From: Felis catus
Lineage: Eukaryota
DNA length: 64,000 nucleotides
Reading direction: 5' to 3'
NCBI RefSeq assembly: GCF_018350175.1
Contig: NC_058383.1
Coordinates: forward strand, 7,254,001-7,318,000
The position numbers and the translations under genes are program-made. Of this stretch, positions 479 to 64,000 are shown piece after piece. The number at the start of each line of letters is the position of its first letter. Within the stretch, counting starts at the first letter, position 1. The notes beneath the pieces are model-generated. The model was not told the DNA's origin, ran no database searches, and saw only the letters and a list, made by a program, of their open reading frames with translations.

Positions 479-1660
<1,182 letters not shown>

Positions 1661-21010: not shown

Positions 21011-22571
21011 NNNNNNNNNNNNNNNNNNNNNNNNNNNNNNNNNNNNNNNNNNNNNNNNNNNNNNNNNNNNNNNNNNNNNNNNNNNNNNNNNNNNNNNNNN
21101 NNNNNNNNNNNNNNNNNNNNNNNNNNNNNNNNNNNNNNNNNNNGGATCAACCCATGTGTGATATATTGTCATATAATATTGATTGACATTCCTCAAAAAA
21201 CTTTAAAGGAAATATTGTTTGACTCAATTCTCCTATTTTTAAATTGGGAAAAGTCATTATTTAATCTAAAAACTGGACTTTGGTTTCTGCAGTTTTCCCC
21301 AATTTATTAGAAGTGTGTTCAATCAGTTGCATGTTGCTGCATTTCACCCTGCGGTCCATCCCACCTGGGCCTCCCCTGTGCCCAGCACCCCATCCTCATC
21401 GCCAGCCACTCTGGGCTGTATCAGGAACCAGGTAGTGCAGCTGGGTGGTGAGCCCAGCCCAGACGACACTCAGGCCACTGGCTCTATGCAGCGCTGGCCA
21501 AAGGCGACTGTCCAGATGCCCCTGCCTGCCTTGCACAGGGAGCCATGTCTCTCACAGAGCCACCCATGACTGCCCCCTCTGGGCCCATATTATTGAAAAC
21601 AAGTGGGCTTGTTACCAGGCTGGGTTGGACAGGCCTCCTGAGTCAGTCACTTTCAGCAGTGCTCCATGTCGGCTGCAGGTCACAAAATCCCTGTCTCAGG
21701 AGCTGGCCTCCAGCCCATTCCTGTAACCCGCAGCCAGCTGGTCATCTGTGGGCAATTCCACATCGTGTAGGCACTTTCTCCACCCAAACCATCACAACCA
21801 CGATCACACATGTACACACACGCACACGCACACATACGTCCCAATACCACACACACACACACAGCTCAGCTCGTTGTCCGGGAGGATGGACTGAGAGAGG
21901 ATAAGGTGTTCACTCTCCATTTAGTCCTGGAAGTGGCCAGAGGAGTGTAATCTGTAAAGAAAGCATCGTTAACTTTCTAATTGATTAAGGTTCCATGGAG
22001 TTACAAAGAGAAATTGGTCCATGAGCCTCCACCCTAGGAGTTACAGTCTGGAAAACAAAAGTGAGCAGTTCGGGAGTTGCAGGAACTAGGAGACTGAGCC
22101 CATCCCGTGCACTGAGAGGCAACTTATTCTCTCTTCTGATCCTCCGTGGCCCTCGTCCTGGGCATTTAATCGCTTGCCAGGTGCTCTTGCTTCTACCGCC
22201 ACGAGATCTCCATAGCAACCTCCTCCTCCCATTGCTGCCTCCTCTCCCCTACAACCATGACGCCACTAGGCCCTCGGGTGCCAAGAGCGGCTCTGCTCAC
22301 CACACCCCATGCCAGGCGCCCAGGCCGGGCCCCTAATGGGAAGCCTGTCCTCTGCAACCCTGACCTTCACCGTCGTCGGGCCTCCTGCCTCACCGAAAAT
22401 CAAGGCTCTCTGGTCTGACTTATCTCAACTTCCTGACCTCTCACCTAACTCAGAAGGTCTGCACATCCCCACCATCTCCTTACCTGCAGTTGTGGAGGAA
22501 GAAGCTTACACCTAGTCCCTGAGAAGCGGCTTGCAGGAACCAGCCAAGACTGGACGGCACGCCTGGGGGGT

Positions 22572-25289: not shown

Positions 25290-26700
25290 CCCTAAATGCC
25301 TGGGTTTCGTTCACTGATGGCCCAGCCTAGATGAAACCTGATGGGGTCCACTGGGTGGCTGACGCTACCCAGCTTCAGGGCCGGCGACGCAAAACTGAAA
25401 GCCAATGTCACGGCTCTGCTCAGCAGGGAGAACTCAAAGCTGTTCTCATCATTAATGTGGCCAGCATTCCACTGAGCTTTTACTGACTTGGGCTGTTAGT
25501 CAATGGCCTGGCTGCTTGGTTTGCCACTTGAAGATGACAGAGACAATTAAAGGCATGCCCTTTGGGGCAATGCACTTTGGAAACACACCTTGGCTCTGAC
25601 AGCTGAGTCACTCATGTGCGTGCCCAAGGTTGGGACCTGGTCTCAAAGGCTGGCACTTTTAAGATGCTGATCAAGGAGCATCTGCATGGCTGTCAGTTGA
25701 GCATCTTATTCTTGGTTTCGGCTCAGGTCATGATCCCAGGGTCGTGGGATTGAGCCCTGCGTCCGGCTCCGTGCTGAGTGTNNNNNNNNNNNNNNNNNNN
25801 NNNNNNNNNNNNNNNNNNNNNNNNNNNNNNNNNNNNNNNNNNNNNNNNNNNNNNNNNNNNNNNNNNNNNNNNNNNNNNNNNNNNNNNNNNNNNNNNNNNN
25901 NNNNNNNNNNNNNNNNNNNNNNNNNNNNNNNNNNNNNNNNNNNNNNNNNNNNNNNNNNNNNNNNNNNNNNNNNACACTGCCTAGAAGCTCCCTCCCACTC
26001 CTCCTAAATCGTCTCCACCAAACTTTCAACACTTTTTAGGGGCTTTCTTGGTGCCAGTGTCCCTGGTCCATTCTGATGGAACTTAGACCACATCGTTATG
26101 GCCCTTGAAACTAAGCTGTGTCATGTTTTAGGCTTTGTAGACCATCTACAGTCTGACATTTGGTGCACCTTTTGTCCCCAGATCTAACCAACAATGGGCC
26201 AACAGTCAAGGTGTTGGATGGACATTCCACACTCCCTACCATCCACAGCATCTGAGTGCCAAGGGCTGCAATGGCCTCCTCCAAATTATCCCTACCTCCC
26301 TCACCTCCTCCCGAGTAAGGTGTCATGGTCGCTACAGACCCTAGTAAGGTGTCATGGTCGCTAAATGTGGCTGCTGCCTGAAAGTGTTCATCTCCTCTTG
26401 GTTGGCCACCATCTCTTGGGTAATGATCAGGATGAAAGGGAGCTTTGTAGACTTGTTTTAAAAATTAAAGATTCTGCCCTGACCATTCCTGAGTATGACA
26501 GTTCTTCCCCCGGCCTCCCATGGCTACCCCAGGCCATCCTGGTTGGTAGACCCTTTGGATACAGCCCAGCCAAAAGGGAGCCTAGGGAATTCCAACTTAA
26601 TTCTGGTTCAGCCACCAGGATTCTCTTCATGGACTGACATAATTCTAGATCACAAAGACAATGACCATTCAACTGAGGGCATTGCTCTCCAGTTCCCCCA
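25290..26700 (+). mobile_element. Degraded ERVL-class retroviral pol (RNase H and integrase remnants), split by a SINE and an N gap
   Basis: Hand translation across stops and frameshifts: WVSFTDG (25301), SAQQGELKAVL (25415-25447), NGLAAWFAT; LQSD and QQWANSQGVGWTFHTPYHPQ...NGLL (about 26150-26284). These resemble ERVL RNase H and integrase core motifs. Confidence 0.7.
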
Positions 26701-42981: not shown

Positions 42982-47680
<4,699 letters not shown>

Positions 47681-55440: not shown

Positions 55441-56770
55441 CCCCTGCTTTTGTTTGAGTCCTCAGGAGGGGCAGGGGTCCTGGAGAAGAACCCTCTGAAG
55501 TCTGAGCAATCCCTTCCCTGACCCACATAAGGGTTCGTGTGTATGTGCGAGGGATCCCACCCCAAGGCTTGTAACTGTTCTCTCCTATCTGGTCTCAGGC
55601 AGGATCCTGGTGGTGCAGCATGGCATGGCTACGGGGACAAAGGTGGGAGCAGTAGGTGGAAGGCCTGCCCCAACAGATCAGCCCTCTGCCTGCCATCTAG
55701 CCCCTTAACTGTCAGGTGTGTGGAGGGACAGTATTGAAGGCTTTCCCCTTTAAATATCTCTCCTACTCCCCACCCCACCCAGAGGTCAATGAAGGCATTG
55801 GAGCTGTGGGCCTTAGGAAAGTCACTTCGCCCCTCGGGGGTCTGTTTTTAGACCCTTCCGAGGAAGAAGCCAGCGCGGACATTCTCTACGACCTATACAC
55901 ACGCTGCCTGCATCTAGGAGGCTACAAGCCGACAAATTTAACACGACGGGGACACTGTAACAGGATGGGGTGATGTTGATAAGTGGGGTAGATATTTGGT
56001 CTACTTCATATTAATTTCACCGAGGGCCCACCATGGGATTTCACAGGTGCCAAATTTTCTATATCGCTAGTAAATTTTTTAAAAATACCAGCTGAGCCTG
56101 TAGTTGCAAACAACTGACCTGCAAACAACATAGCTAGCCGATATGGCAGCGCCCACAGAATAAGCCGTTGGTCGCCGTCTGTTAGAAGCTAGTAGTGTTT
56201 TGTAATTTGCAGTTCAGGGAGACTAGCAGGGGTCCCTGGCTGATAACTACTTAGGCTAGGATCTGTGCGGCCCCTCTCGGCGCCTGCGGGAGAATACCCT
56301 GGAATTCAAAATCAGCGTGCGGGAGCGCGCGTCGGCCACCATACTCTGGGTTTACGGGAGCTCGCTGGGGACAAAATCCCTCACGCTTTTCGAGGGCCGG
56401 TGTCCCCACGGAGAGGCAAGAATTAAGAGAAGCGGTGAAACTAAGTCCAAGACGGGGAACGGCTCCGGTTAGAATGAGGGGAATAAAGAGGATATCCTTA
56501 GGGGAGTGATGGGTGGGGACCTACCGCATAGGAGCGTGGCGACGGCCGAAGACACTGAGGGACTGGCAGGCGAGCTCACCCTAAGGGATGATTGGACGAT
56601 ACCATCTACGGGAGGGGGTTGGGGCGATACCATCTTAAGGGTGAGAGGGGGGGTGGCAAAGAACTGAGACTTGGAAGGTGCCACGCGGCGGAGGCAGGCG
56701 CGTGTGGGAACCCGAAGGGACTGGGCAGTCCCCCATAGCCCCACTTTCCTTCCCCAGCCGTCCTTCTGCC

Positions 56771-57523
56771 ATGAGCGGTCTAGTGCAGACCGAGCCGCTG
56801 CTCGGGGAGCCGCCTCTGCTGGTGCGCGGCGACCCCTACTCGGTGGTGGTCCTTCTGCAGGGCTATGCGGAGCCCGAGGGGGTGGGCGACGCGGTGCGCG
56901 CCGACGGCTCCGTGACGTTGGTGCTGCCTCAGGCCTGGGGCCCGGCTTCCAGCCACCGAGAGTCCCCGCCCGAGGGCGGCGGGGCGAAGACCGCCCTGGA
57001 GGAGGCGGCCCGTGGTCCCATCCTCGTAGACACCGGGGGCCCTTGGGCCCGGGACACACTCCTGGGGGCCCTGGCGCGGCAGGGCGTGGCCCCCGGAGAC
57101 GTGACTCTGGTGGTGGGCACCCATGGACACTCGGATCACATCGGGAACCTGGGGCTGTTTCCCGGGGCGGCTCTGCTGGTCTCTCACGACTTCTGCCTCC
57201 CCGGGGGCCGCTACTTCCCCCACGGGCTAGGTGAGGAGCGGCCCCTGCGGCTGGGGCCGGGGCTCGAGGTGTGGGCCACGCCGGGCCATGGGGGCCAGCG
57301 GGACGTGAGCGTAGTGGTGGCGGGCACGGTCTTGGGCACCGTGGTGGTGGCGGGCGATGTGTTTGAACGCAGTGGAGACGAAGACTCGTGGCAAGCGCTG
57401 AGCGAAGACCCGGTGGCCCAGGAGCGGAGCCGGAAGAGGGTCCTAGGCACAGCGGACGTGGTTGTGCCTGGTCACGGAGCCCCCTTTAGGGTGGTCAGGG
57501 AAGCCCCTCAACCACCGAACTGA
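56771..57523 (+). CDS. MBLAC1: Metallo-beta-lactamase domain-containing protein 1 (histone pre-mRNA-degrading endoribonuclease), single coding exon, 250 aa
   Basis: Start gccATGagc at 56771. Metal-binding THGHSDH motif, plus TPGH, AGD and VPGH motifs. AATAAA at 57726-57731. Confidence 0.95.
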
Positions 57524-57929
57524 CGTCCAGGAGAACAGAGGACCCAGTCGGCTGAGTCGGAGGAATCAGGGGTGATGGCTTCCAGCTGTCGCAAGAAGCT
57601 GGTTTTCCAGCAAGGACAGTCACCGATATCACTGCAACCAAACTAGGACCAAGCACTGACTCAGCCGTGTGCCACCTCTTTGGGCCTCCGTAAAATGGGA
57701 GAGTGTTCTTGGGAGAGTCGTCCAAAATAAAAATAGAAAACTGTATGGAAAATCGTACGGCCCTCATGTAAATGCGAATCATTAATAATGACAGTCCTGA
57801 AATTTGGTAGTTAGCAGCTGCAGCAGGGGGACACTTTGGCCAATTGCTTATTTCTCATAAGATAGAGATTTGCTGTGAAGGTGCAGGGCATATAAGTAAC
57901 ACCTTAGTCATGTGATTATCATCCATCTG

Positions 57930-58560
57930 TTCAAGGAATATTTAACAACCTGCAATGTTTCAAACACTGCCCTAGGTCATGGGGATGCAACAGTGAGCAA
58001 GCTAGACAAACTCCCTGTCCCTTATGGAGATTACATTCTAGAGACAAAGACAAGTAAACAACAATAATAGTAAACCAAATAATTACAGATTGTGAATAGT
58101 GACATGAAAGAAAAGGAGGGCAAAGGGGATGGAGTGCCAAGATGGGAAGATGACCTCTTTTATTTAAGGTCGTCAGGAAGAGCCTCCGAGGAGATGATGT
58201 TTGATCAGGGAACCAAATGAGAAGAAAGCCAACCATATGAGGATCTGGCAGTTGTGCATTCCAGGCACAGGAACAGCAGGTATAAAGGTCCTGAGGCAGG
58301 ACAGCTTGACCTGCTTGAGTAGCAAGACTGTGGGGTTAGAATGTAGAGTGCCAAGGAAGAGTGGCAACAAATGAGGACAAAGAATTAGGCCAGGCCATCA
58401 TGGACCATGGTTAAGGGTTTGGATTTATACTGAGAGAGAAGCCTTTGGCTTTTGAGCAGGCTAATGACTAGTTCTAAAGTTCTACTCTGAGTGGAGAAGT
58501 GGTCAGAGTAGGGCAAGAATAGAATCAGCTGGACTGGTTAGGAAACTACTGTAGTCTTTC
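57930..58560 (+). mobile_element. L2 remnant
   Basis: gttcaaggaatatttaacaacctgc...cctgtccttatggagattacattctag...gaggcaggacagcttgacctgcttgag...caggccatcatggaccatggttaagggtttggattt. Confidence 0.6.
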
Positions 58561-58682
58561 AGGCAAGAGAAGTTAGTGGCACCTGCTCTTCTCCCAGAAA
58601 TGCTGTTCTGGCTGTGGCCCTCTTTACAGCTGTGCCCCAGGCCCTCCATCCACACAGTGTCAGAACCCACAGAAACACTCGG

Positions 58683-59203
58683 GGTGGGGCAGATGAAGGA
58701 GAGGAGCAAGTCTACCTTGTTGCGGATGATGAGACACCCTGGGTGGATGCTGTGGCGGCAGGGCCAGACTGAGGGTTATTTTCCAGGCATCCGCAAAGGC
58801 CAGGTGGAGGTCACCAAAGGCAGCTCAGAGGAGCTGGTTAACCTAGAGGGTGAACCAGTACCTGCCATACATAGACTCGTAGTTGGTGTTGACCAGTTTG
58901 ATGACCACAAGAGTGCACAGTTCCCAGGCCAACGGTGCAGCCACAGCCGCCCAGATCCCTGCCAGTCATCAGATAAAGATAAATGAAGTGAAGGTGGCGA
59001 TGTGGGCACCCAGCCTCAGAACTATCACGGTGTGGGGGCCCCTGGCCAGGTTCCCCACCTTCTGGGCCACAGAGTGTGGGGAGGCCACTGGTGTGCGGAG
59101 GGAGTGTAGGGGCCAGCTGTGTGCTCACCAATGCAGCACTGTGCCCTGAGTGATCTCCATGGCCCCATCTGATATGTGGAGTGTAGATCCAATAGCTTCA
59201 GGG
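58683..59203 (-). pseudogene. NXPE-family (SGNH/PC-esterase, Nxpe5-like) terminal exon, pseudogenised
   Basis: Acceptor ctcatag|CC at 59203. Translation LKLLDLHSTYQ...VLHW*AHSWPLHSLRTPVAS...GPHTVIVLRLGAH...**LAGIWAAV...TLVVIKLVNT...WFTL*VNQLL*AAF...DAWK...IHP...LLSFICPT. Stops at 59127-59125, 58971-58966 (two), 58845-58843 and 58827-58825, plus two frameshifts. Confidence 0.85.
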
Positions 59204-60737
59204 CTATGAGGGGGATGAAAAGGAGGGGATGGGGGTTATAGAGAACTATGCACTTTCAACTTGTACAAATAAAAATTCCAATCCCGACTTACTTTCCATA
59301 ACATGGTACTCTTGCCCATGATTCTGGTCTGGTCATCTAGAGCCAACACATCTCTTTGGCCACACTGACTGTCTCCACAATGGACAGGTCACCTAAGCTA
59401 GTCCAGGTTTGGTCATCTTAGGGGTTTTGCTGGAGCTAAAAGAAAAGTCAAGTTCTTTCCTGAAAGACTGACATGGGAGATGTATGGAAGTGTGGAATCA
59501 CTATATTTACATACATCACTATATGAAGTGATGCTACACTGAAGCTAATGCTACACTGTATGTTCACTAACTGGAATTTAAACAAAAACTTAAAAAACAA
59601 AAAACAAAAACACCACACTGACCTGAGAGGATAGGTCATTTGCCACTCTGTGGGAAGAGCCCAGGGCTCTGGGGCCAAGTGGAGGCTGAGAATGAAGCTG
59701 AACTGTAGGGGGCAGAAATGAGCAGTTATGAGAAATAGACCCCGGGGAGAAATCTGAGTGCTGAATTCAAGCCAGATCCGCTGCTGAACTCCTGAGTCAC
59801 CAGGGCTAATCAACCCCTTTGCTGCCTGAAAGGCTTTGACTGTGTTTTCAGTCACAACAAGAGGAGTCCTGGGTGGATACAAACACAGGTGGAAATGACC
59901 CATTAGAGAGAGAGGCCTCGGAAATGGCGGGAAAGCAGCATTCGAGGTGGGGCCCAGAGTGACTGTACTCTTAGAAGTTTCTTTTAGCTTCCTTCTTGTG
60001 TAAATTCTTAGGAAAACTTGACCCATATGATTAGATACTTGTACTTGCAGATATTCAGTGGCTCCACATCGCACACTTTCTCGTCCAGTCATCTCTGAGA
60101 CAAACTTTCCCTGCTCCAGTTTGGCAGGACTGCCTGCTTCCTTCCAGACTCCTCTACTCCTTCTCTCCTGCAGGCCTTTGATCCTGCTCTATTCCTGCTG
60201 GCCTCCCTCTGTTCTGTACCATCCATGGATCCAGGCTCAACTCAGCTCATCTACAGAAAAACCTCCCCTGATTTTTCCAGCTCTTCTTTAAACTCTTGCA
60301 GTGCATTCTATGTATTATTCACTTAACATTAGATATACCCAGTGTTGATAATTTTTTCTGGAAATGTCCTCTCCTCATTGTGCCCCTTGAGAGCAGAAAC
60401 TAAGGAAAAAACAAAACAAAACAAAAAAAAACTTCTCTGAATGCTCCAGAGCTTGTGTTATGTCTACAAATGCCATGTAATAGACACATGCTATTTTTCT
60501 CAGCTCTGACTCCTTGCCCAGGACTTCAGGGTCTGTCTCTGCCCATTCTCTGGAGAAGTTCCAGTATCCTGTGCACTCTGCGAACAAAGGGGTGCCACTC
60601 AGAGCCCTCCTGTTCACCTCTTCCTATATGAAGCTCCAGGTGTCTTGCCAGAGGGCTTTGGGGCCGGGATCCCAGGGTGGTATGGGAGTTGATGGATCAA
60701 AGCTGTAGGAGGGAGAAAAACAGAACAAGCTAAATAA

Positions 60738-61031
60738 CGGGAAGCTCCCCAAAGCAAGGCTGCAGGAACCAGCCTGTCTGAGGACAAATAAGCCAGGATG
60801 CAGCCAAAGGGCCTGCCCCCACCAGCCCATCTTGGGGCCTGTCCCGTGGTGGGGAAAGAAGGTTCAAGGGGTTCTCAGGAAGCTGGAAGTGTCCCCCATG
60901 ACAATGAAGCCTCCAGTGACCTGGACCTGGAGCAACTCCTGGAAGATGTTGGAGAAGAGCCGGAGCAGCTGGAGGAGCCACAGTGTGGAGATGACCCTGG
61001 GGAGTTCACCACGACCTTCTTTGAGGAATAG
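60738..61031 (+). pseudogene. ZCWPW1: ZCWPW1-like C-terminal exon fragment with in-frame stops
   Basis: EAPQSKA...SQEAGSVPHDNEASSDLDLEQLLEDVG...FFEE* matches the recalled ZCWPW1 C-terminus (APQSKA...QEAGSVPLEDEASSDLDLEQLMEDVG). In-frame TAA at 60789 and 60735. AATAAA at 61173-61178. No upstream ZCWPW1 exons recognised. Confidence 0.65.
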
Positions 61032-61934
61032 CTGTGTGCTCCTGCCTCACCCGCTTCCACAGGAGCAGCAGAGAGAGCCCCTCAGAGGGTCCCTGGGAAG
61101 CTACTAAGTGTGGGGTTTGTTCCTCAGCTACAGGTCAATTGGCTAAAGTCACGGCTCTGCAGTTTATGTGTTAATAAAACAGGTTACCGGCTTAAGTGGT
61201 TCCATTCGTCTCTAACCACATGCTTCCCTTGGCTTCTCTCCCCACCCCCCCCACCCCGGTCCCTGTGGCATGTCCCTGTTTCTGGTGGGAGGCCGGCACA
61301 GTACAGGGATCTGGGAAGGCAGTGAGACGCAAGTCCTGGAAGGAGGCCGTCGAGAAGGGCAGGTCTGGGTTCAGACCTGGCTCAGCCACTTACTAGGTGT
61401 GTGGCCTTGAGAAAAGCACTAACCATTCTGGGTCTTCTCTTCATGCCTCCGGTGAGTGCATCCAGGACTGTATAAGGTTGTTGGTGATGCTTACATGAGT
61501 GATGCACTTAACGCGGTACATGTTATGGTAGCAGAAGTAGAATGGTTAGATAAGGGGGCAGAGTCTGGGCTCTGGGCTGGCTGCCAGTGTTTGGTGTCCC
61601 CCACCTGGCCTGAAGGCAGTCACTGAACACCAGCCCTGGAGGAGGGATCTTGGGTGTGAGCTACTTTCACAGCTCATTTTTGGCGAGAAGGAAAAGACAG
61701 AAGATGCCATCAGTTTCTCCTTAGGTGCCTTCAGGCAAATCCTACTAGTACTTTTATTTTTGTGGGCAAGGGCTGGGCAGTTGAAGAGGGAATGGAAGCA
61801 GATGGCTCTGTTTCTCTCTGGTCCTTGGTGGCCTTCCACACCCACTGGCTTTTGTCTGTGTCTGGCCAGGGTTATTACTAGAAGCTGTGACCTTCTGTGC
61901 AGCTTAGTCTCAGGGAGTCCCCATTCAGTCCTGC

Positions 61935-62069
61935 TCACTGGGCCTTTCCGATAGAGTACAAGGTCTCCTGCGGGCTCTCCTTGGGAGGGGTGCAGGGAGG
62001 GGCTGCCGGTGACGAGCTGGAGAGGGTGAGGGAGGCATAGAGGATGCTGCTGTCATCCTGCACTTCATC
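61935..62069 (-). CDS. PILRA: PILRA-like inhibitory receptor, terminal coding exon with an ITIM (intact frame; functional status unknown)
   Basis: Acceptor ttttccttctttctcccccag|GAT at 62069. DEVQDDSSILYASLTLSSSSPAAPPCTPPKESPQETLYSIGKAQ* resembles the recalled PILRA end DDGIVYASLALSS...SPQNETLYSVLKA. AATAAA at 61758-61753. Confidence 0.72.
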   Translation of the reverse strand, partial: DEVQDDSSILYASLTLSSSSPAAPPCTPPKESPQETLYSIGKAQ

Positions 62070-63329
62070 CTGGGGGAGAAAGAAGGAAAAGGCGGTAGAC
62101 AGCAGAAGGGGAGTGGCGGCTGTTTCCCCTCCCTCCCTCCCCCTGCCGAACCTCAGGGCTGGAATGGGTGTCTGTGCTGCAGCCAGTTCCTCTCCACCCT
62201 CTGCCACTGAAACCTCTGCTGTCCCCCTGCCACCATCTCCCCTCCTGTCCTTCTGAGTCTGTCTACAGCGTTTCCCAAGGATCAGCCCCTGGTTCACAGA
62301 CATCCCCCCCACCACCCAACACTATCCTGGGAGGTCCCATCATCGACAGGGACAGCCCTCTGAACACACAGGACTCCTATGTCCCCCCAACTCTAGTGAC
62401 CTCCACTCCACTCAGCCATACCCTGGACTCCTTTTTATCCCTGGGATTGAGAACTCTGAAATATTAAGTGCCAGCATCATTTTTATGCTACAACTTTCTT
62501 TCCTTCCAGCTCTTTTTTATCATCAGCCTGTTTGGTATATCTGTGTTTTGACCCCCTGAACTCTTGTCCCTTAATAATCCACTTTCTTTTGGGCTGTCCA
62601 AGCTCCCTGCTCATCCTCTACTCTCTACTCCTGCCCTTTCACTAGCTCCTTGACCGCCTGTGTTCCTCTGTCCTTATGCCACACTTAGCTGACACAGCTC
62701 TAATTCTGGATGTGGCTGATGGTAGAGAATGCTATTAGCTTACCTAATATCCATTCATTTCTTCTTATTCAGCTACAGAACCTTGATTTTATTTGGGGTG
62801 GCAGTGTGCTGCCCTACTGACAGATGTGGGACATAGTACATCCTAGCCAGTAAGATTCAAAGGGAAGTTGTGGGTAGTGTTTTCAGGAAGACTCTTTAAA
62901 ATGAGGACAGACAGCTGTGGCATAGTCTTTTTTTTTTTTTTTTTTTTTTTTTCCTTTCTTCCTTCCTCCTGTTTCCTGTCTGGATTCAGAAATAATGGCT
63001 GGAGTCTGAGCAGCCATCTTGGATCATGAGGCAACCTTCAGGATAAAAGCCAGTAGCCGTAACAGTGAGCAGGAAGATAGAAGCCTGAGTGCCTAAGGAC
63101 AGTGTCCTCTGCTATCTGCTTCCTCATCCTTTTATATGAGGGAAAACAATAAACTCAGTCTTATTTAAGCCCTGTTACTTTTGGTCTCTGGTGCCAGCAG
63201 GTGAACGTAACTCCTAATGAACAAGTCCCAGAGGGTTCTAACCTGCATGAGGAAAAACATGAGGCAATGCCTTTACAGAGTTTATGGCTTCTCATCTGAG
63301 TTGAATCCTTAAATACTGTCTTCTATATC

Positions 63330-63850
63330 CTCAGTGACTATGTCATGTTTTTCTTCATCTCCAACCCTCATCCTCACTCTAGAGACAACCACTGTGATTT
63401 TTTCCTCTGCAGAATTAAAAACAATTTGTATATATTTGAGTTTATCAATATTTTTATTCATGGCTCTTAGGTTTTATGTTATACTTAGGGAGATCACCTC
63501 TACTCCATGGTTATAAAATAGTCTCACGTGCTTTATTCTGATGCTAGGGTTCTTCCCCTCCCCCCCATGCCGTCCACCCCCCATTTAACTCTTTGATTGA
63601 TCTCCATGGAATTTATTTTGGTGCAAATTATGAGATAACATTTTCTCAGATGGCTGCTCAATTGTTCCCTCACCATGTATTGAATTACTCATCTTTCCCT
63701 ATTGATTAGAAATGCCAGTTTTTAACCTACTAAATTCCTGAATATATTTTGACTTATTTTGTCCTGCCTATATTTGGGCTTTTCTCTTTTAATACATTGG
63801 TTTATCTGTGTATGAACATGACAGCATCGAATCATTTTAATTATTGCAGC
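63330..63850 (-). mobile_element. Old L1 fragment, antisense
   Basis: AT-rich antisense L1 text (ttaggttttatgtt, tctccatggaatttattttggtg, ttctcagatggctgctcaattgttccctcaccatgtattgaa). Confidence 0.55.
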
Positions 63851-64000
63851 TTAATAATTACAGGTGCTAGTGCTCACATAGTCCTTATTCTGTGCCAGGA
63901 TCTGTTCTCAATGAATTACATTTAATTGTCATGACAACCCCCAGGGTGAGTACTATCATTATTCTCATTTTACTGATGAGTAAGTTGAGGCACAGAGTAA

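What the first reader, a model, noticed from the sequence alone, without database searches (positions are those of the whole stretch)
59204..62069. Displaced, inverted ZCWPW1-tail / PILRA-tail block next to MBLAC1
Seen: a ZCWPW1-like last exon (+, two in-frame TAA, own AATAAA at 61173) converges on a PILRA-like last exon (-, AATAAA at 61758). Recalled: PILRA and ZCWPW1 are tail-to-tail neighbours in human, but next to MEPCE, several genes beyond MBLAC1 and in the opposite orientation to COPS6/MBLAC1. Inference: a segmental duplication or inversion moved a PILR locus here and carried along a dead ZCWPW1 3' end. There is no room for ZCWPW1's zf-CW/PWWP exons between 59.2 and 60.7 kb. This may mark a lineage-specific expansion of paired Ig-like receptors. 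If no other copy exists, it would instead mean loss of the PRDM9-mark reader ZCWPW1.
Basis: partly seen in the sequence, partly recalled or inferred. Interest (0 to 1): 0.78.

Follow-up and report, generated by a model that had tools for sequence, protein, structure and literature searches.

The report
Dead ZCWPW1 tail beside cat PILRB
Just downstream of the cat MBLAC1 gene lies a leftover copy of the junction between an immune-receptor gene (PILR) and the meiosis gene ZCWPW1; the ZCWPW1 piece is a dead duplicate, the working ZCWPW1 is intact elsewhere, so this is an ordinary relic of gene-cluster duplication and not a gene loss.

Summary
Window 60741-61031 (+) is homologous to the last coding exon of ZCWPW1 (tblastn E down to 3e-33). 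It carries two in-frame TAA codons, and no other ZCWPW1 exon lies anywhere in the 64 kb. Window 62070-61938 (-) is an intact PILRA-type ITIM tail exon, with a canonical acceptor and its own AATAAA.

The duplication reading is supported and the ZCWPW1-loss reading is rejected. Cat and nine other felid records have full-length ZCWPW1 with zf-CW and PWWP domains. Their own tail differs from the window copy (83-87% identity over 87 aa). On a tree the window copy is sister to all felid functional tails, with a 4-10 times longer branch. This fits a duplicate made on the felid stem, or one last gene-converted there.

The PILR exon differs from cat PILRA's tail at 6-7 of 46 residues. It belongs to a gene model (P0162) whose Ig and transmembrane exons lie beyond 64000. 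That transmembrane segment has the lysine signature of activating PILRB.

Not tested: whether the position next to MBLAC1 is felid-specific, and how the block got there. The scan had not noted this block before. Interest is low to moderate.

The parts
56768..57523 (+). MBLAC1 coding ORF, the conserved left neighbour
   Evidence: Pfam Lactamase_B E 2.8e-12; ORF list
58663..59203 (-). NXPE-family last-exon remnant with several in-frame stops. Its upper end at 59203/59204 is a canonical splice acceptor.
   Evidence: Pfam PF24536 NXPE4_C E 9e-7 on 58972-59124(-), profile positions 73-124; weak match E 0.11 on 58663-58824(-); acceptor context; six-frame reading
59204..60709 (.). Spacer that must hold the left edge of the duplicated block, at an unknown position. 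It includes an L1-like 3' end at about 59470-59612 (read by eye). It has no ZCWPW1 or NXPE exon.
   Evidence: No tblastn hit; 214-aa ORF 59448-60092(-) has no Pfam family; sequence read
60710..61031 (+). Pseudo-exon: paralogous copy of the last coding exon of ZCWPW1. In-frame TAA at 60735-60737 and 60789-60791; natural TAG at 61029-61031.
61032..61178 (+). Former ZCWPW1 3' UTR with AATAAA at 61173-61178
61753..61937 (-). 3' UTR of the PILR terminal exon: stop TGA at 61937-61935, AATAAA at 61758-61753 on the minus strand
61938..62070 (-). PILRA-type terminal exon, open for 44 codons. The first ITIM (SILYASL) is intact. The second tyrosine motif has Gly where felid PILRA has Val at +3. Canonical acceptor at 62070.
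62689..62724 (-). 12-codon 'exon' of gene model P0162, without AG or GT flanks; probably a gene-build bridge
63378..63419 (-). 14-codon 'exon' of gene model P0162, without an AG acceptor; probably a gene-build bridge

Best explanation
The block is a paralogous copy of the 3'-to-3' junction between a PILR receptor gene and ZCWPW1. It now sits about 3 kb downstream of MBLAC1, in a felid genome (most likely domestic cat).

The ZCWPW1 part is a non-functional pseudo-exon. It is the last exon only, has two premature stops, and lacks the zf-CW and PWWP exons. It arose from, or was last gene-converted by, the functional gene on the stem lineage of Felidae.

The PILR part is the terminal exon of the neighbouring PILRB-type (activating, DAP12-type lysine) gene. 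That gene's Ig-V, stalk and transmembrane exons lie just beyond the right end of the window.

Shown: homology of both exons; the stops; the difference from the functional cat ZCWPW1 and PILRA tails; intact ZCWPW1 in felids; and that residues 238-302 of model P0162 map exactly onto the window.

Inferred:
- P0162's first 237 residues lie beyond 64000.
- The ITIM exon now serves mainly as the 3' terminal exon. PILR exons 2 to 4 end in phase 1 with a G, so a transmembrane exon spliced to 62070 (or to the CAG 12 nt further in) would read GGA TGA, that is Gly-stop. This gives the short cytoplasmic tail typical of PILRB.
- The route to this position is open: a tandem PILR duplication that copied the ZCWPW1 tail, followed by an inversion, or an inverted duplicative insertion into the NXPE pseudogene.
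For: ZCWPW1 homology, and only of the tail.

Stops and signals.

Felid ZCWPW1 is intact: 10 felid records with precomputed zf-CW+PWWP; Pfam on cat P0091. The Wells 2020 source data list cat, tiger, leopard, cheetah and puma orthologues, described there as matching all 31 conserved residues.

The window tail is not the functional tail: 83-87% identity over 87 aa. It shares the felid-only states Trp-to-Ser, Pro-to-His and the 'TTTFFEE' ending, but keeps ancestral 'TSLSEDK' where all ten felid records have 'TNFPEDK'. On the tree it is sister to the nine felid functional tails included (supports 87/65 and 84/89), with branch 0.11 against 0.03 or less.

PILR exon. It differs at 6-7 of 46 residues from cat PILRA XP_011288699.3 and from other felid PILRA tails.

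Gene model: P0162 residues 238-302 map at 100% to 63419-63378, 62724-62689 and 62060-61941. Its Ig domain matches solved PILRB and PILRA structures (E 4e-34) and Pfam V-set. Its transmembrane segment aligns with canid and walrus PILRB-type segments (VVKVAL..KTAILGL).

The true pair is adjacent elsewhere: cat ZCWPW1 and PILRA RefSeq protein numbers are consecutive (…697, …698, …699). This is soft evidence.

The same ITIM-exon ORF occurs on five independent short contigs. 14 DNA runs from 7 studies hold 92-96% of the sampled words of 57600-63500.

Literature: PILRA has an ITIM and PILRB signals through DAP12 (PMC6235402). The PILR locus is known for duplication and conversion (Wilson et al. 2006, as cited).
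Against: No DNA of the true PILRA-ZCWPW1 locus or of other species could be compared, so the extent and edges of the duplicated segment are unknown.

Adjacency to MBLAC1 rests on the assembly alone.

P0162 is an unnamed automatic model, and two of its exons lack canonical splice sites. Its linking of the PILRB-type exons to this ITIM exon is therefore unproven.

Tree supports are moderate, on about 80 usable columns. The C-terminal 41 residues of the pseudo-exon are identical to the functional felid tail, which could reflect later gene conversion rather than age.

Caniform PILRB models also end in an ITIM exon, so the duplication may be older than Felidae and since homogenised.
Confidence: 0.72

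Rival explanations
1. One inversion with staggered breaks did the whole job, leaving a single PILR cluster. The block from LAMTOR4 to the PILR genes was inverted. The ZCWPW1 tail was duplicated at the breakpoint, so one copy stayed with ZCWPW1 and one travelled with the PILR gene to the MBLAC1 side, splitting the NXPE pseudogene.
For: The orientation fits exactly: pseudo-tail on +, PILR on -, directly after the NXPE last exon and MBLAC1. Only the last exon of NXPE is present on this side.
Against: The PILR tail here differs from cat PILRA's tail, and the gene model is PILRB-type. The PILR copy therefore already existed.
Confidence: 0.3
2. Assembly misjoin: the block is a real paralogous copy, but its adjacency to MBLAC1 is an artefact of a chimeric contig between 59.2 and 60.7 kb.
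For: The PILR region is duplicated and repeat-rich. An L1 fragment and A-rich runs lie in the spacer. No read evidence could be obtained.
Against: There is no N gap between 47107 and 64000. 14 DNA runs hold 92-96% of the sampled words of the stretch, although this has little power for a single junction.
Confidence: 0.06
3. ZCWPW1 is broken or lost in this species, and the tail is all that remains.
For: Only the last exon is present here, and it has two stops.
Against: Full-length cat ZCWPW1 proteins carry zf-CW and PWWP and have a different, open tail. Cat is listed among species with a ZCWPW1 orthologue and a complete PRDM9.
Confidence: 0.01
4. The PILRB-type gene here encodes a hybrid receptor that joins the lysine transmembrane segment in frame to the ITIM tail. 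The ITIM exon would then be coding, not a relic.
For: The exon is open, with an intact acceptor and an intact first ITIM. Automatic models in walrus, raccoon dog and African wild dog join a PILRB-type transmembrane segment to an ITIM tail.
Against: No homologue of the two middle cytoplasmic exons lies in the 1.9 kb upstream. Direct splicing from a phase-1 exon gives Gly-stop (inference). The second tyrosine motif is degraded, Val to Gly. P0162's bridging exons lack canonical splice sites. The wild-dog model is flagged low quality.
Confidence: 0.12

Closest known systems
PILRA/PILRB paired-receptor locus beside ZCWPW1 (human 7q22.1, mouse chr5; Wilson et al. 2006, Physiol Genomics 27:201, cited)
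   Same: An ITIM-bearing PILRA-type terminal exon lies tail-to-tail with the ZCWPW1 last exon, each with its own poly(A) signal. The locus is known for duplication and gene conversion.
   Different: Here the junction is a second copy. Its ZCWPW1 side is a single dead exon, its PILR side belongs to a PILRB-type gene model, and it lies next to MBLAC1. By my recollection of the human and mouse maps it should lie next to MEPCE; this was not testable here.
Functional felid ZCWPW1 (e.g. cat P0091, 638 aa)
   Same: The last 87 residues are 83-87% identical. The final 41 are identical, including the felid-specific ending.
   Different: No zf-CW, PWWP or any other exon. Two in-frame stops. Five to eight private substitutions. 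It keeps three ancestral residues that all functional felid copies have changed.
Cat PILRA (P0172, XP_011288699.3, 295 aa)
   Same: The terminal exon has the ILYASL ITIM and a TLYSI motif, with 80-85% identity over 46 aa.
   Different: 6-7 of 46 residues differ. The second motif lacks the hydrophobic +3 residue. The associated model has a lysine-bearing transmembrane segment and no homologue of the middle cytoplasmic exons.
Carnivore PILRB-type gene models (walrus P0170, raccoon dog P0167, African wild dog P0171)
   Same: The transmembrane signature VV(K/I)VAL..(I/V)xKTAILGL, and a PILRA-like ITIM exon at the 3' end of the model.
   Different: In those models the ITIM tail is nearly identical to that species' PILRA tail. 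In the cat window it has diverged.

Membership tests
ZCWPW1 (functional gene) | CW-type zinc finger (PF07496) | tested here: not met
   No similarity to the zf-CW region of eight ZCWPW1 proteins anywhere in the 64 kb
ZCWPW1 (functional gene) | PWWP domain (PF00855) | tested here: not met
   Same tblastn searches; only the tail at 60741-61001 matches
ZCWPW1 (functional gene) | Open reading frame through the last exon | tested here: not met
   TAA at 60735-60737 and at 60789-60791, inside the aligned coding region
ZCWPW1-derived sequence (homology only) | Significant similarity to the ZCWPW1 C-terminal exon | tested here: met
   phmmer E 3e-19; tblastn E down to 3e-33 with felid proteins
PILRA (inhibitory receptor) | Cytoplasmic ITIM, (I/V/L/S)xYxx(L/V) | tested here: met
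   SILYASL is present and open. The second motif, TLYSIG, has lost its +3 hydrophobic residue
PILRA (inhibitory receptor) | Uncharged transmembrane segment, plus middle cytoplasmic exons joining it in frame to the ITIM | tested here: not met
   Model P0162 of this locus has lysines in the transmembrane segment. No homologue of the middle exons lies in 62.1-64 kb. The transmembrane exon itself lies outside the window.
PILRB (activating receptor) | V-set Ig domain of PILR type | tested here: inconclusive
   Present in P0162 (PDB PILRB 4nfd E 4e-34; Pfam V-set), but encoded beyond 64000. The link to the window rests on 65 exactly mapped residues.
PILRB (activating receptor) | Lysine in the transmembrane segment, for DAP12 pairing | tested here: inconclusive
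   P0162 shares the motif VVKVAL..KTAILGL with canid and walrus PILRB-type models. DAP12 pairing is from the literature. The exon is not in the window.
PILRB (activating receptor) | Short cytoplasmic tail without an ITIM | not testable with these tools
   Needs cDNA or RNA reads. The Gly-stop prediction is an inference from exon phases.
Segmental duplicate (paralogous copy) | A second, distinct copy of the same sequence in the same genome | tested here: met
   At protein level only: the cat ZCWPW1 tail (P0091) and the cat PILRA tail (P0172) both differ from the window's copies. DNA of the other copy was not available.
NXPE-family pseudogene (left flank) | NXPE4_C domain similarity with disrupted frame | tested here: met
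   PF24536 E 9e-7, above the curated cut-off; stops between the pieces

The most novel reading that the evidence does not exclude
Felid PILRB (and perhaps carnivore PILRB in general) is caught part-way between an inhibitory and an activating receptor. It keeps a spliceable ITIM exon behind a DAP12-type lysine transmembrane segment. Alternative splicing could then yield either a hybrid dual-signalling receptor or a truncated activating one. In addition, a felid-stem rearrangement moved this gene next to MBLAC1 and copied a ZCWPW1 exon on the way.
Probability: 0.12. Interest if true: 0.5.

Novelty: new member of a known kind. Interest (0 to 1): 0.24.

Why it matters
It removes a false alarm.

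It adds a dated example, felid stem by tree and site patterns, of how the PILR paired-receptor locus grows. The duplication unit overshoots into the neighbouring gene and leaves a dead exon behind.

For annotators it flags three things: a pseudo-exon that could be mis-joined to ZCWPW1 or mistaken for a small ORF; a PILRB-type gene whose 3' end carries an unused or ambiguous ITIM exon; and an old automatic model (P0162) with two exons that lack canonical splice sites.

The functional consequence is probably nil for ZCWPW1 and modest for PILRB.

Tried and rejected

- Read laying on 58001-64000 with two DNA and two RNA runs. This was meant to test the join, to find paralogous contigs and to see splicing. 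In local scripts they were written as X.

- Pfam on the tail ORFs gave nothing useful.

- The ZCWPW1-loss reading was rejected.

- The start coordinate 59204 as a rearrangement breakpoint was rejected as shown. It is the splice acceptor of the NXPE exon.

- Wilson et al. 2006 is not held in the library.

- Word searches of the scan's notes for the neighbouring genes found nothing.

- The human ZCWPW1 entry (P0131) was never selected. One unnamed hit (P0008) turned out, when its tail was printed, to look primate-like; it had been in the Pfam scan and was not used afterwards.

Exons were searched apart, by reference.

- N stretches were left alone.
Full report
**Setting.** The window is a mammalian block with these genes, by ORF content:
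- a SCAN/KRAB-type zinc-finger exon at 0.5-1.7 kb (+)
- another zinc-finger exon near 17 kb (-)
- COPS6 near 28 kb (+)
- MCM7 at 31.5-38 kb (-)
- AP4M1 from 39 kb (+)
- TAF6 at 42-47 kb (-)
- MBLAC1 at 56768-57523 (+)

The gene names come from reading the ORF translations. MBLAC1 is also supported by Pfam Lactamase_B. I recall this as the order and orientation on human 7q22.1; that is recollection, not a test.

The genome is a felid, most likely domestic cat:
- Feline metagenome RNA runs and 14 whole-genome-sized runs of one organism hold the stretch.
- A database gene model maps to the window at 100%.
- Other agents' notes on this genome call it cat (unchecked AI notes).

**The ZCWPW1-like exon is real.** The stop-free stretch 60792-61028 was searched with phmmer against 1.84 billion representative proteins. 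It gave 21 hits, best E 3e-19, and the long ones match at their extreme C-terminus. Those long hits carry zf-CW and PWWP domains and are named ZCWPW1.

tblastn of ZCWPW1 proteins onto the whole window finds one region only, 60741-61001. E is about 1e-10 to 3e-16 for the full-length bat and other zf-CW/PWWP representatives, down to 7e-21 for short tail fragments, and down to 3e-33 with felid proteins. The alignment runs through the TAA at 60789-60791, where every functional protein has Glu. A second TAA lies at 60735-60737, and the natural TAG is at 61029-61031.

**ZCWPW1 is not lost.** A word-indexed search with a bat ZCWPW1 returned full-length proteins with both domains from Felis catus (P0091, P0126), Lynx, Neofelis, Panthera, Prionailurus, hyaenas and caniforms. 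Pfam on cat P0091 confirms the domains. The source data of Wells et al. 2020 (PMC7494361) list cat, tiger, leopard, cheetah and puma ZCWPW1 orthologues, described there as matching all 31 conserved residues. They also list a complete KRAB-SSXRD-SET PRDM9 for cat.

**The window copy is a paralogue of the functional tail.** It is only 83-87% identical to the functional tail of any felid over 87 residues.

Site patterns:
- It shares felid-only derived states: Trp to Ser in 'KEGS', Pro to His, and the 'TTTFFEE' ending.
- It keeps ancestral 'TSLSEDK' where all ten felid records have 'TNFPEDK'.
- It has about five to eight private changes, including the stops.

A maximum-likelihood tree of 20 tails places it as sister to the nine felid functional tails included. 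Support is 87/65 for the joint clade and 84/89 for the functional clade. The group sits inside Feliformia (95/95). The window copy's terminal branch is 0.11, against 0.03 or less for the others.

The simplest reading is a duplicate made on the felid stem, or last converted there, and evolving freely since. The places 60904-60952 were written as X in this analysis.

**The PILR exon is real.** On the minus strand, 62070-61938 is open for 44 codons. It is preceded by a polypyrimidine tract and CAG, ends in TGA, and is followed by AATAAA at 61758-61753. A region-restricted search found annotated PILRA of Prionailurus (85% identity, E 7e-14) and meerkat. A second search from that protein brought in cat, lynx, hyaena and caniform PILRA.

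The window's tail differs from cat PILRA (XP_011288699.3, P0172) at 6-7 of 46 positions. That is too many for the same gene. The first ITIM (SILYASL) is intact. The second tyrosine motif has Gly where felid PILRA has Val at +3.

**The gene it belongs to.** An unnamed UniParc/MetaClust protein, P0162 (302 aa), maps with residues 238-302 at 100% identity onto 63419-63378, 62724-62689 and 62060-61941. It is therefore a model of this locus, and its first 237 residues must be encoded beyond 64000.

- Its Ig domain matches solved PILRB and PILRA structures (E 4e-34 and 7e-32) and Pfam V-set.
- Its transmembrane segment carries the lysine-containing signature shared with canid and walrus PILRB-type models, not the uncharged PILRA one.
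- PILRA signals through an ITIM and PILRB through DAP12 (PMC6235402).
- The two short exons that bridge P0162 to the ITIM exon lack canonical AG/GT splice sites, so they look like gene-build artefacts.
- No homologue of the two middle cytoplasmic PILRA exons lies in the 1.9 kb upstream of the ITIM exon.

**How the exon may be used (inference).** Comparing the cat PILRA isoforms P0150 and P0172 shows that exons 2 to 4 end in phase 1 with a G. A transmembrane exon spliced to the acceptor at 62070, or to the internal CAG 12 nt further in, would therefore read GGA TGA, that is Gly-stop. This would give the short tail typical of PILRB. The ITIM exon would then serve only as terminal exon and poly(A) site. 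This is untested.

**Left flank.** The stretch 58663-59203 (-) is the last exon of an NXPE-family pseudogene. Pfam NXPE4_C gives E 9e-7 on 58972-59124, and stops separate the pieces. Its upper end at 59203/59204 is a canonical acceptor. The finding's start coordinate is therefore an exon edge, not a demonstrated breakpoint. The edge of the duplicated block lies somewhere in 59204-60709, which also holds an L1-like 3' end (read by eye).

**Where the true pair is.** The cat RefSeq protein numbers for ZCWPW1 (…697, …698) and PILRA (…699) are consecutive. Puma shows the same pattern. This suggests that the canonical PILRA-ZCWPW1 adjacency persists elsewhere in felids. The evidence is soft.

**What could not be done.**
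There is thus no read evidence on the join, on paralogous contigs or on expression.
- The 92-96% word shares in 14 DNA runs from 7 studies show that the sequence is present in many individuals. They have little power for a single junction.
- The ITIM-exon ORF recurs on five independent short contigs with a few differences.

**Verdict.** The block is a paralogous relic of the PILR/ZCWPW1 tail junction, and its ZCWPW1 part is dead. The PILR part is the 3' end of a PILRB-type gene. ZCWPW1 loss is refuted. Whether the placement next to MBLAC1 is felid-specific, and whether inversion or inverted insertion produced it, remains open. This is a new instance of a process already described for this locus: duplication and conversion (Wilson et al. 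2006, cited).

Noticed in passing
window 58663-59203 (-): NXPE-family last-exon pseudogene right after MBLAC1 (Pfam NXPE4_C E 9e-7). Its upper end is a canonical splice acceptor, so 'truncated by the rearrangement' at 59204 is not shown. The upstream NXPE exons are simply not within 59.2-64 kb.
   Followed up: partly
window 62689-62724 and 63378-63419 (-): Two tiny exons of database model P0162 map here at 100% but lack AG/GT flanks (one has only a GT donor). They look like frame-keeping bridges of an automatic gene build.
   Followed up: yes
proteins P0170 (walrus), P0167 (raccoon dog), P0171 (African wild dog): Automatic caniform PILRB-type models join a lysine-bearing transmembrane segment to an ITIM tail nearly identical to that species' PILRA tail. 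A PILRA-like terminal exon behind PILRB may therefore be general in Carnivora and kept similar by conversion.
   Followed up: partly
proteins P0013 and P0020 (P0013 is giant pangolin, Smutsia gigantea; P0020 is unnamed and pangolin-like by sequence): P0020 fuses a Ribophorin II N-terminal domain to a ZCWPW1-like acidic tail, and P0013 shows a similar short N-terminal stretch read by eye. Copies of the ZCWPW1 tail exon seem to sit at other loci in pangolins too.
   Followed up: no
protein P0002 (Logan contig, species unknown): A 70-aa ORF whose first third is in the +1 frame of the ZCWPW1 tail and whose rest is in the true frame. This is a frameshifted ZCWPW1 tail in another, unidentified mammal.
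   Followed up: no
protein P0188 (ENA contig) versus window 61938-62315 (-): The same intron-plus-ITIM-exon ORF as the window, but with the PILRA-type residues Ser and Val near the end. It is either another felid's copy or a conversion tract from PILRA.
   Followed up: no
window 59470-59612 (+): A short L1-like 3' end with an A-rich tail, inside the spacer that must contain the edge of the duplicated block. Identified by eye only.
   Followed up: no
window 1293-1444, 21011-21143, 25782-25973, 46911-47107: Four N runs of 133-197 bases, one inside a zinc-finger exon.
   Followed up: no
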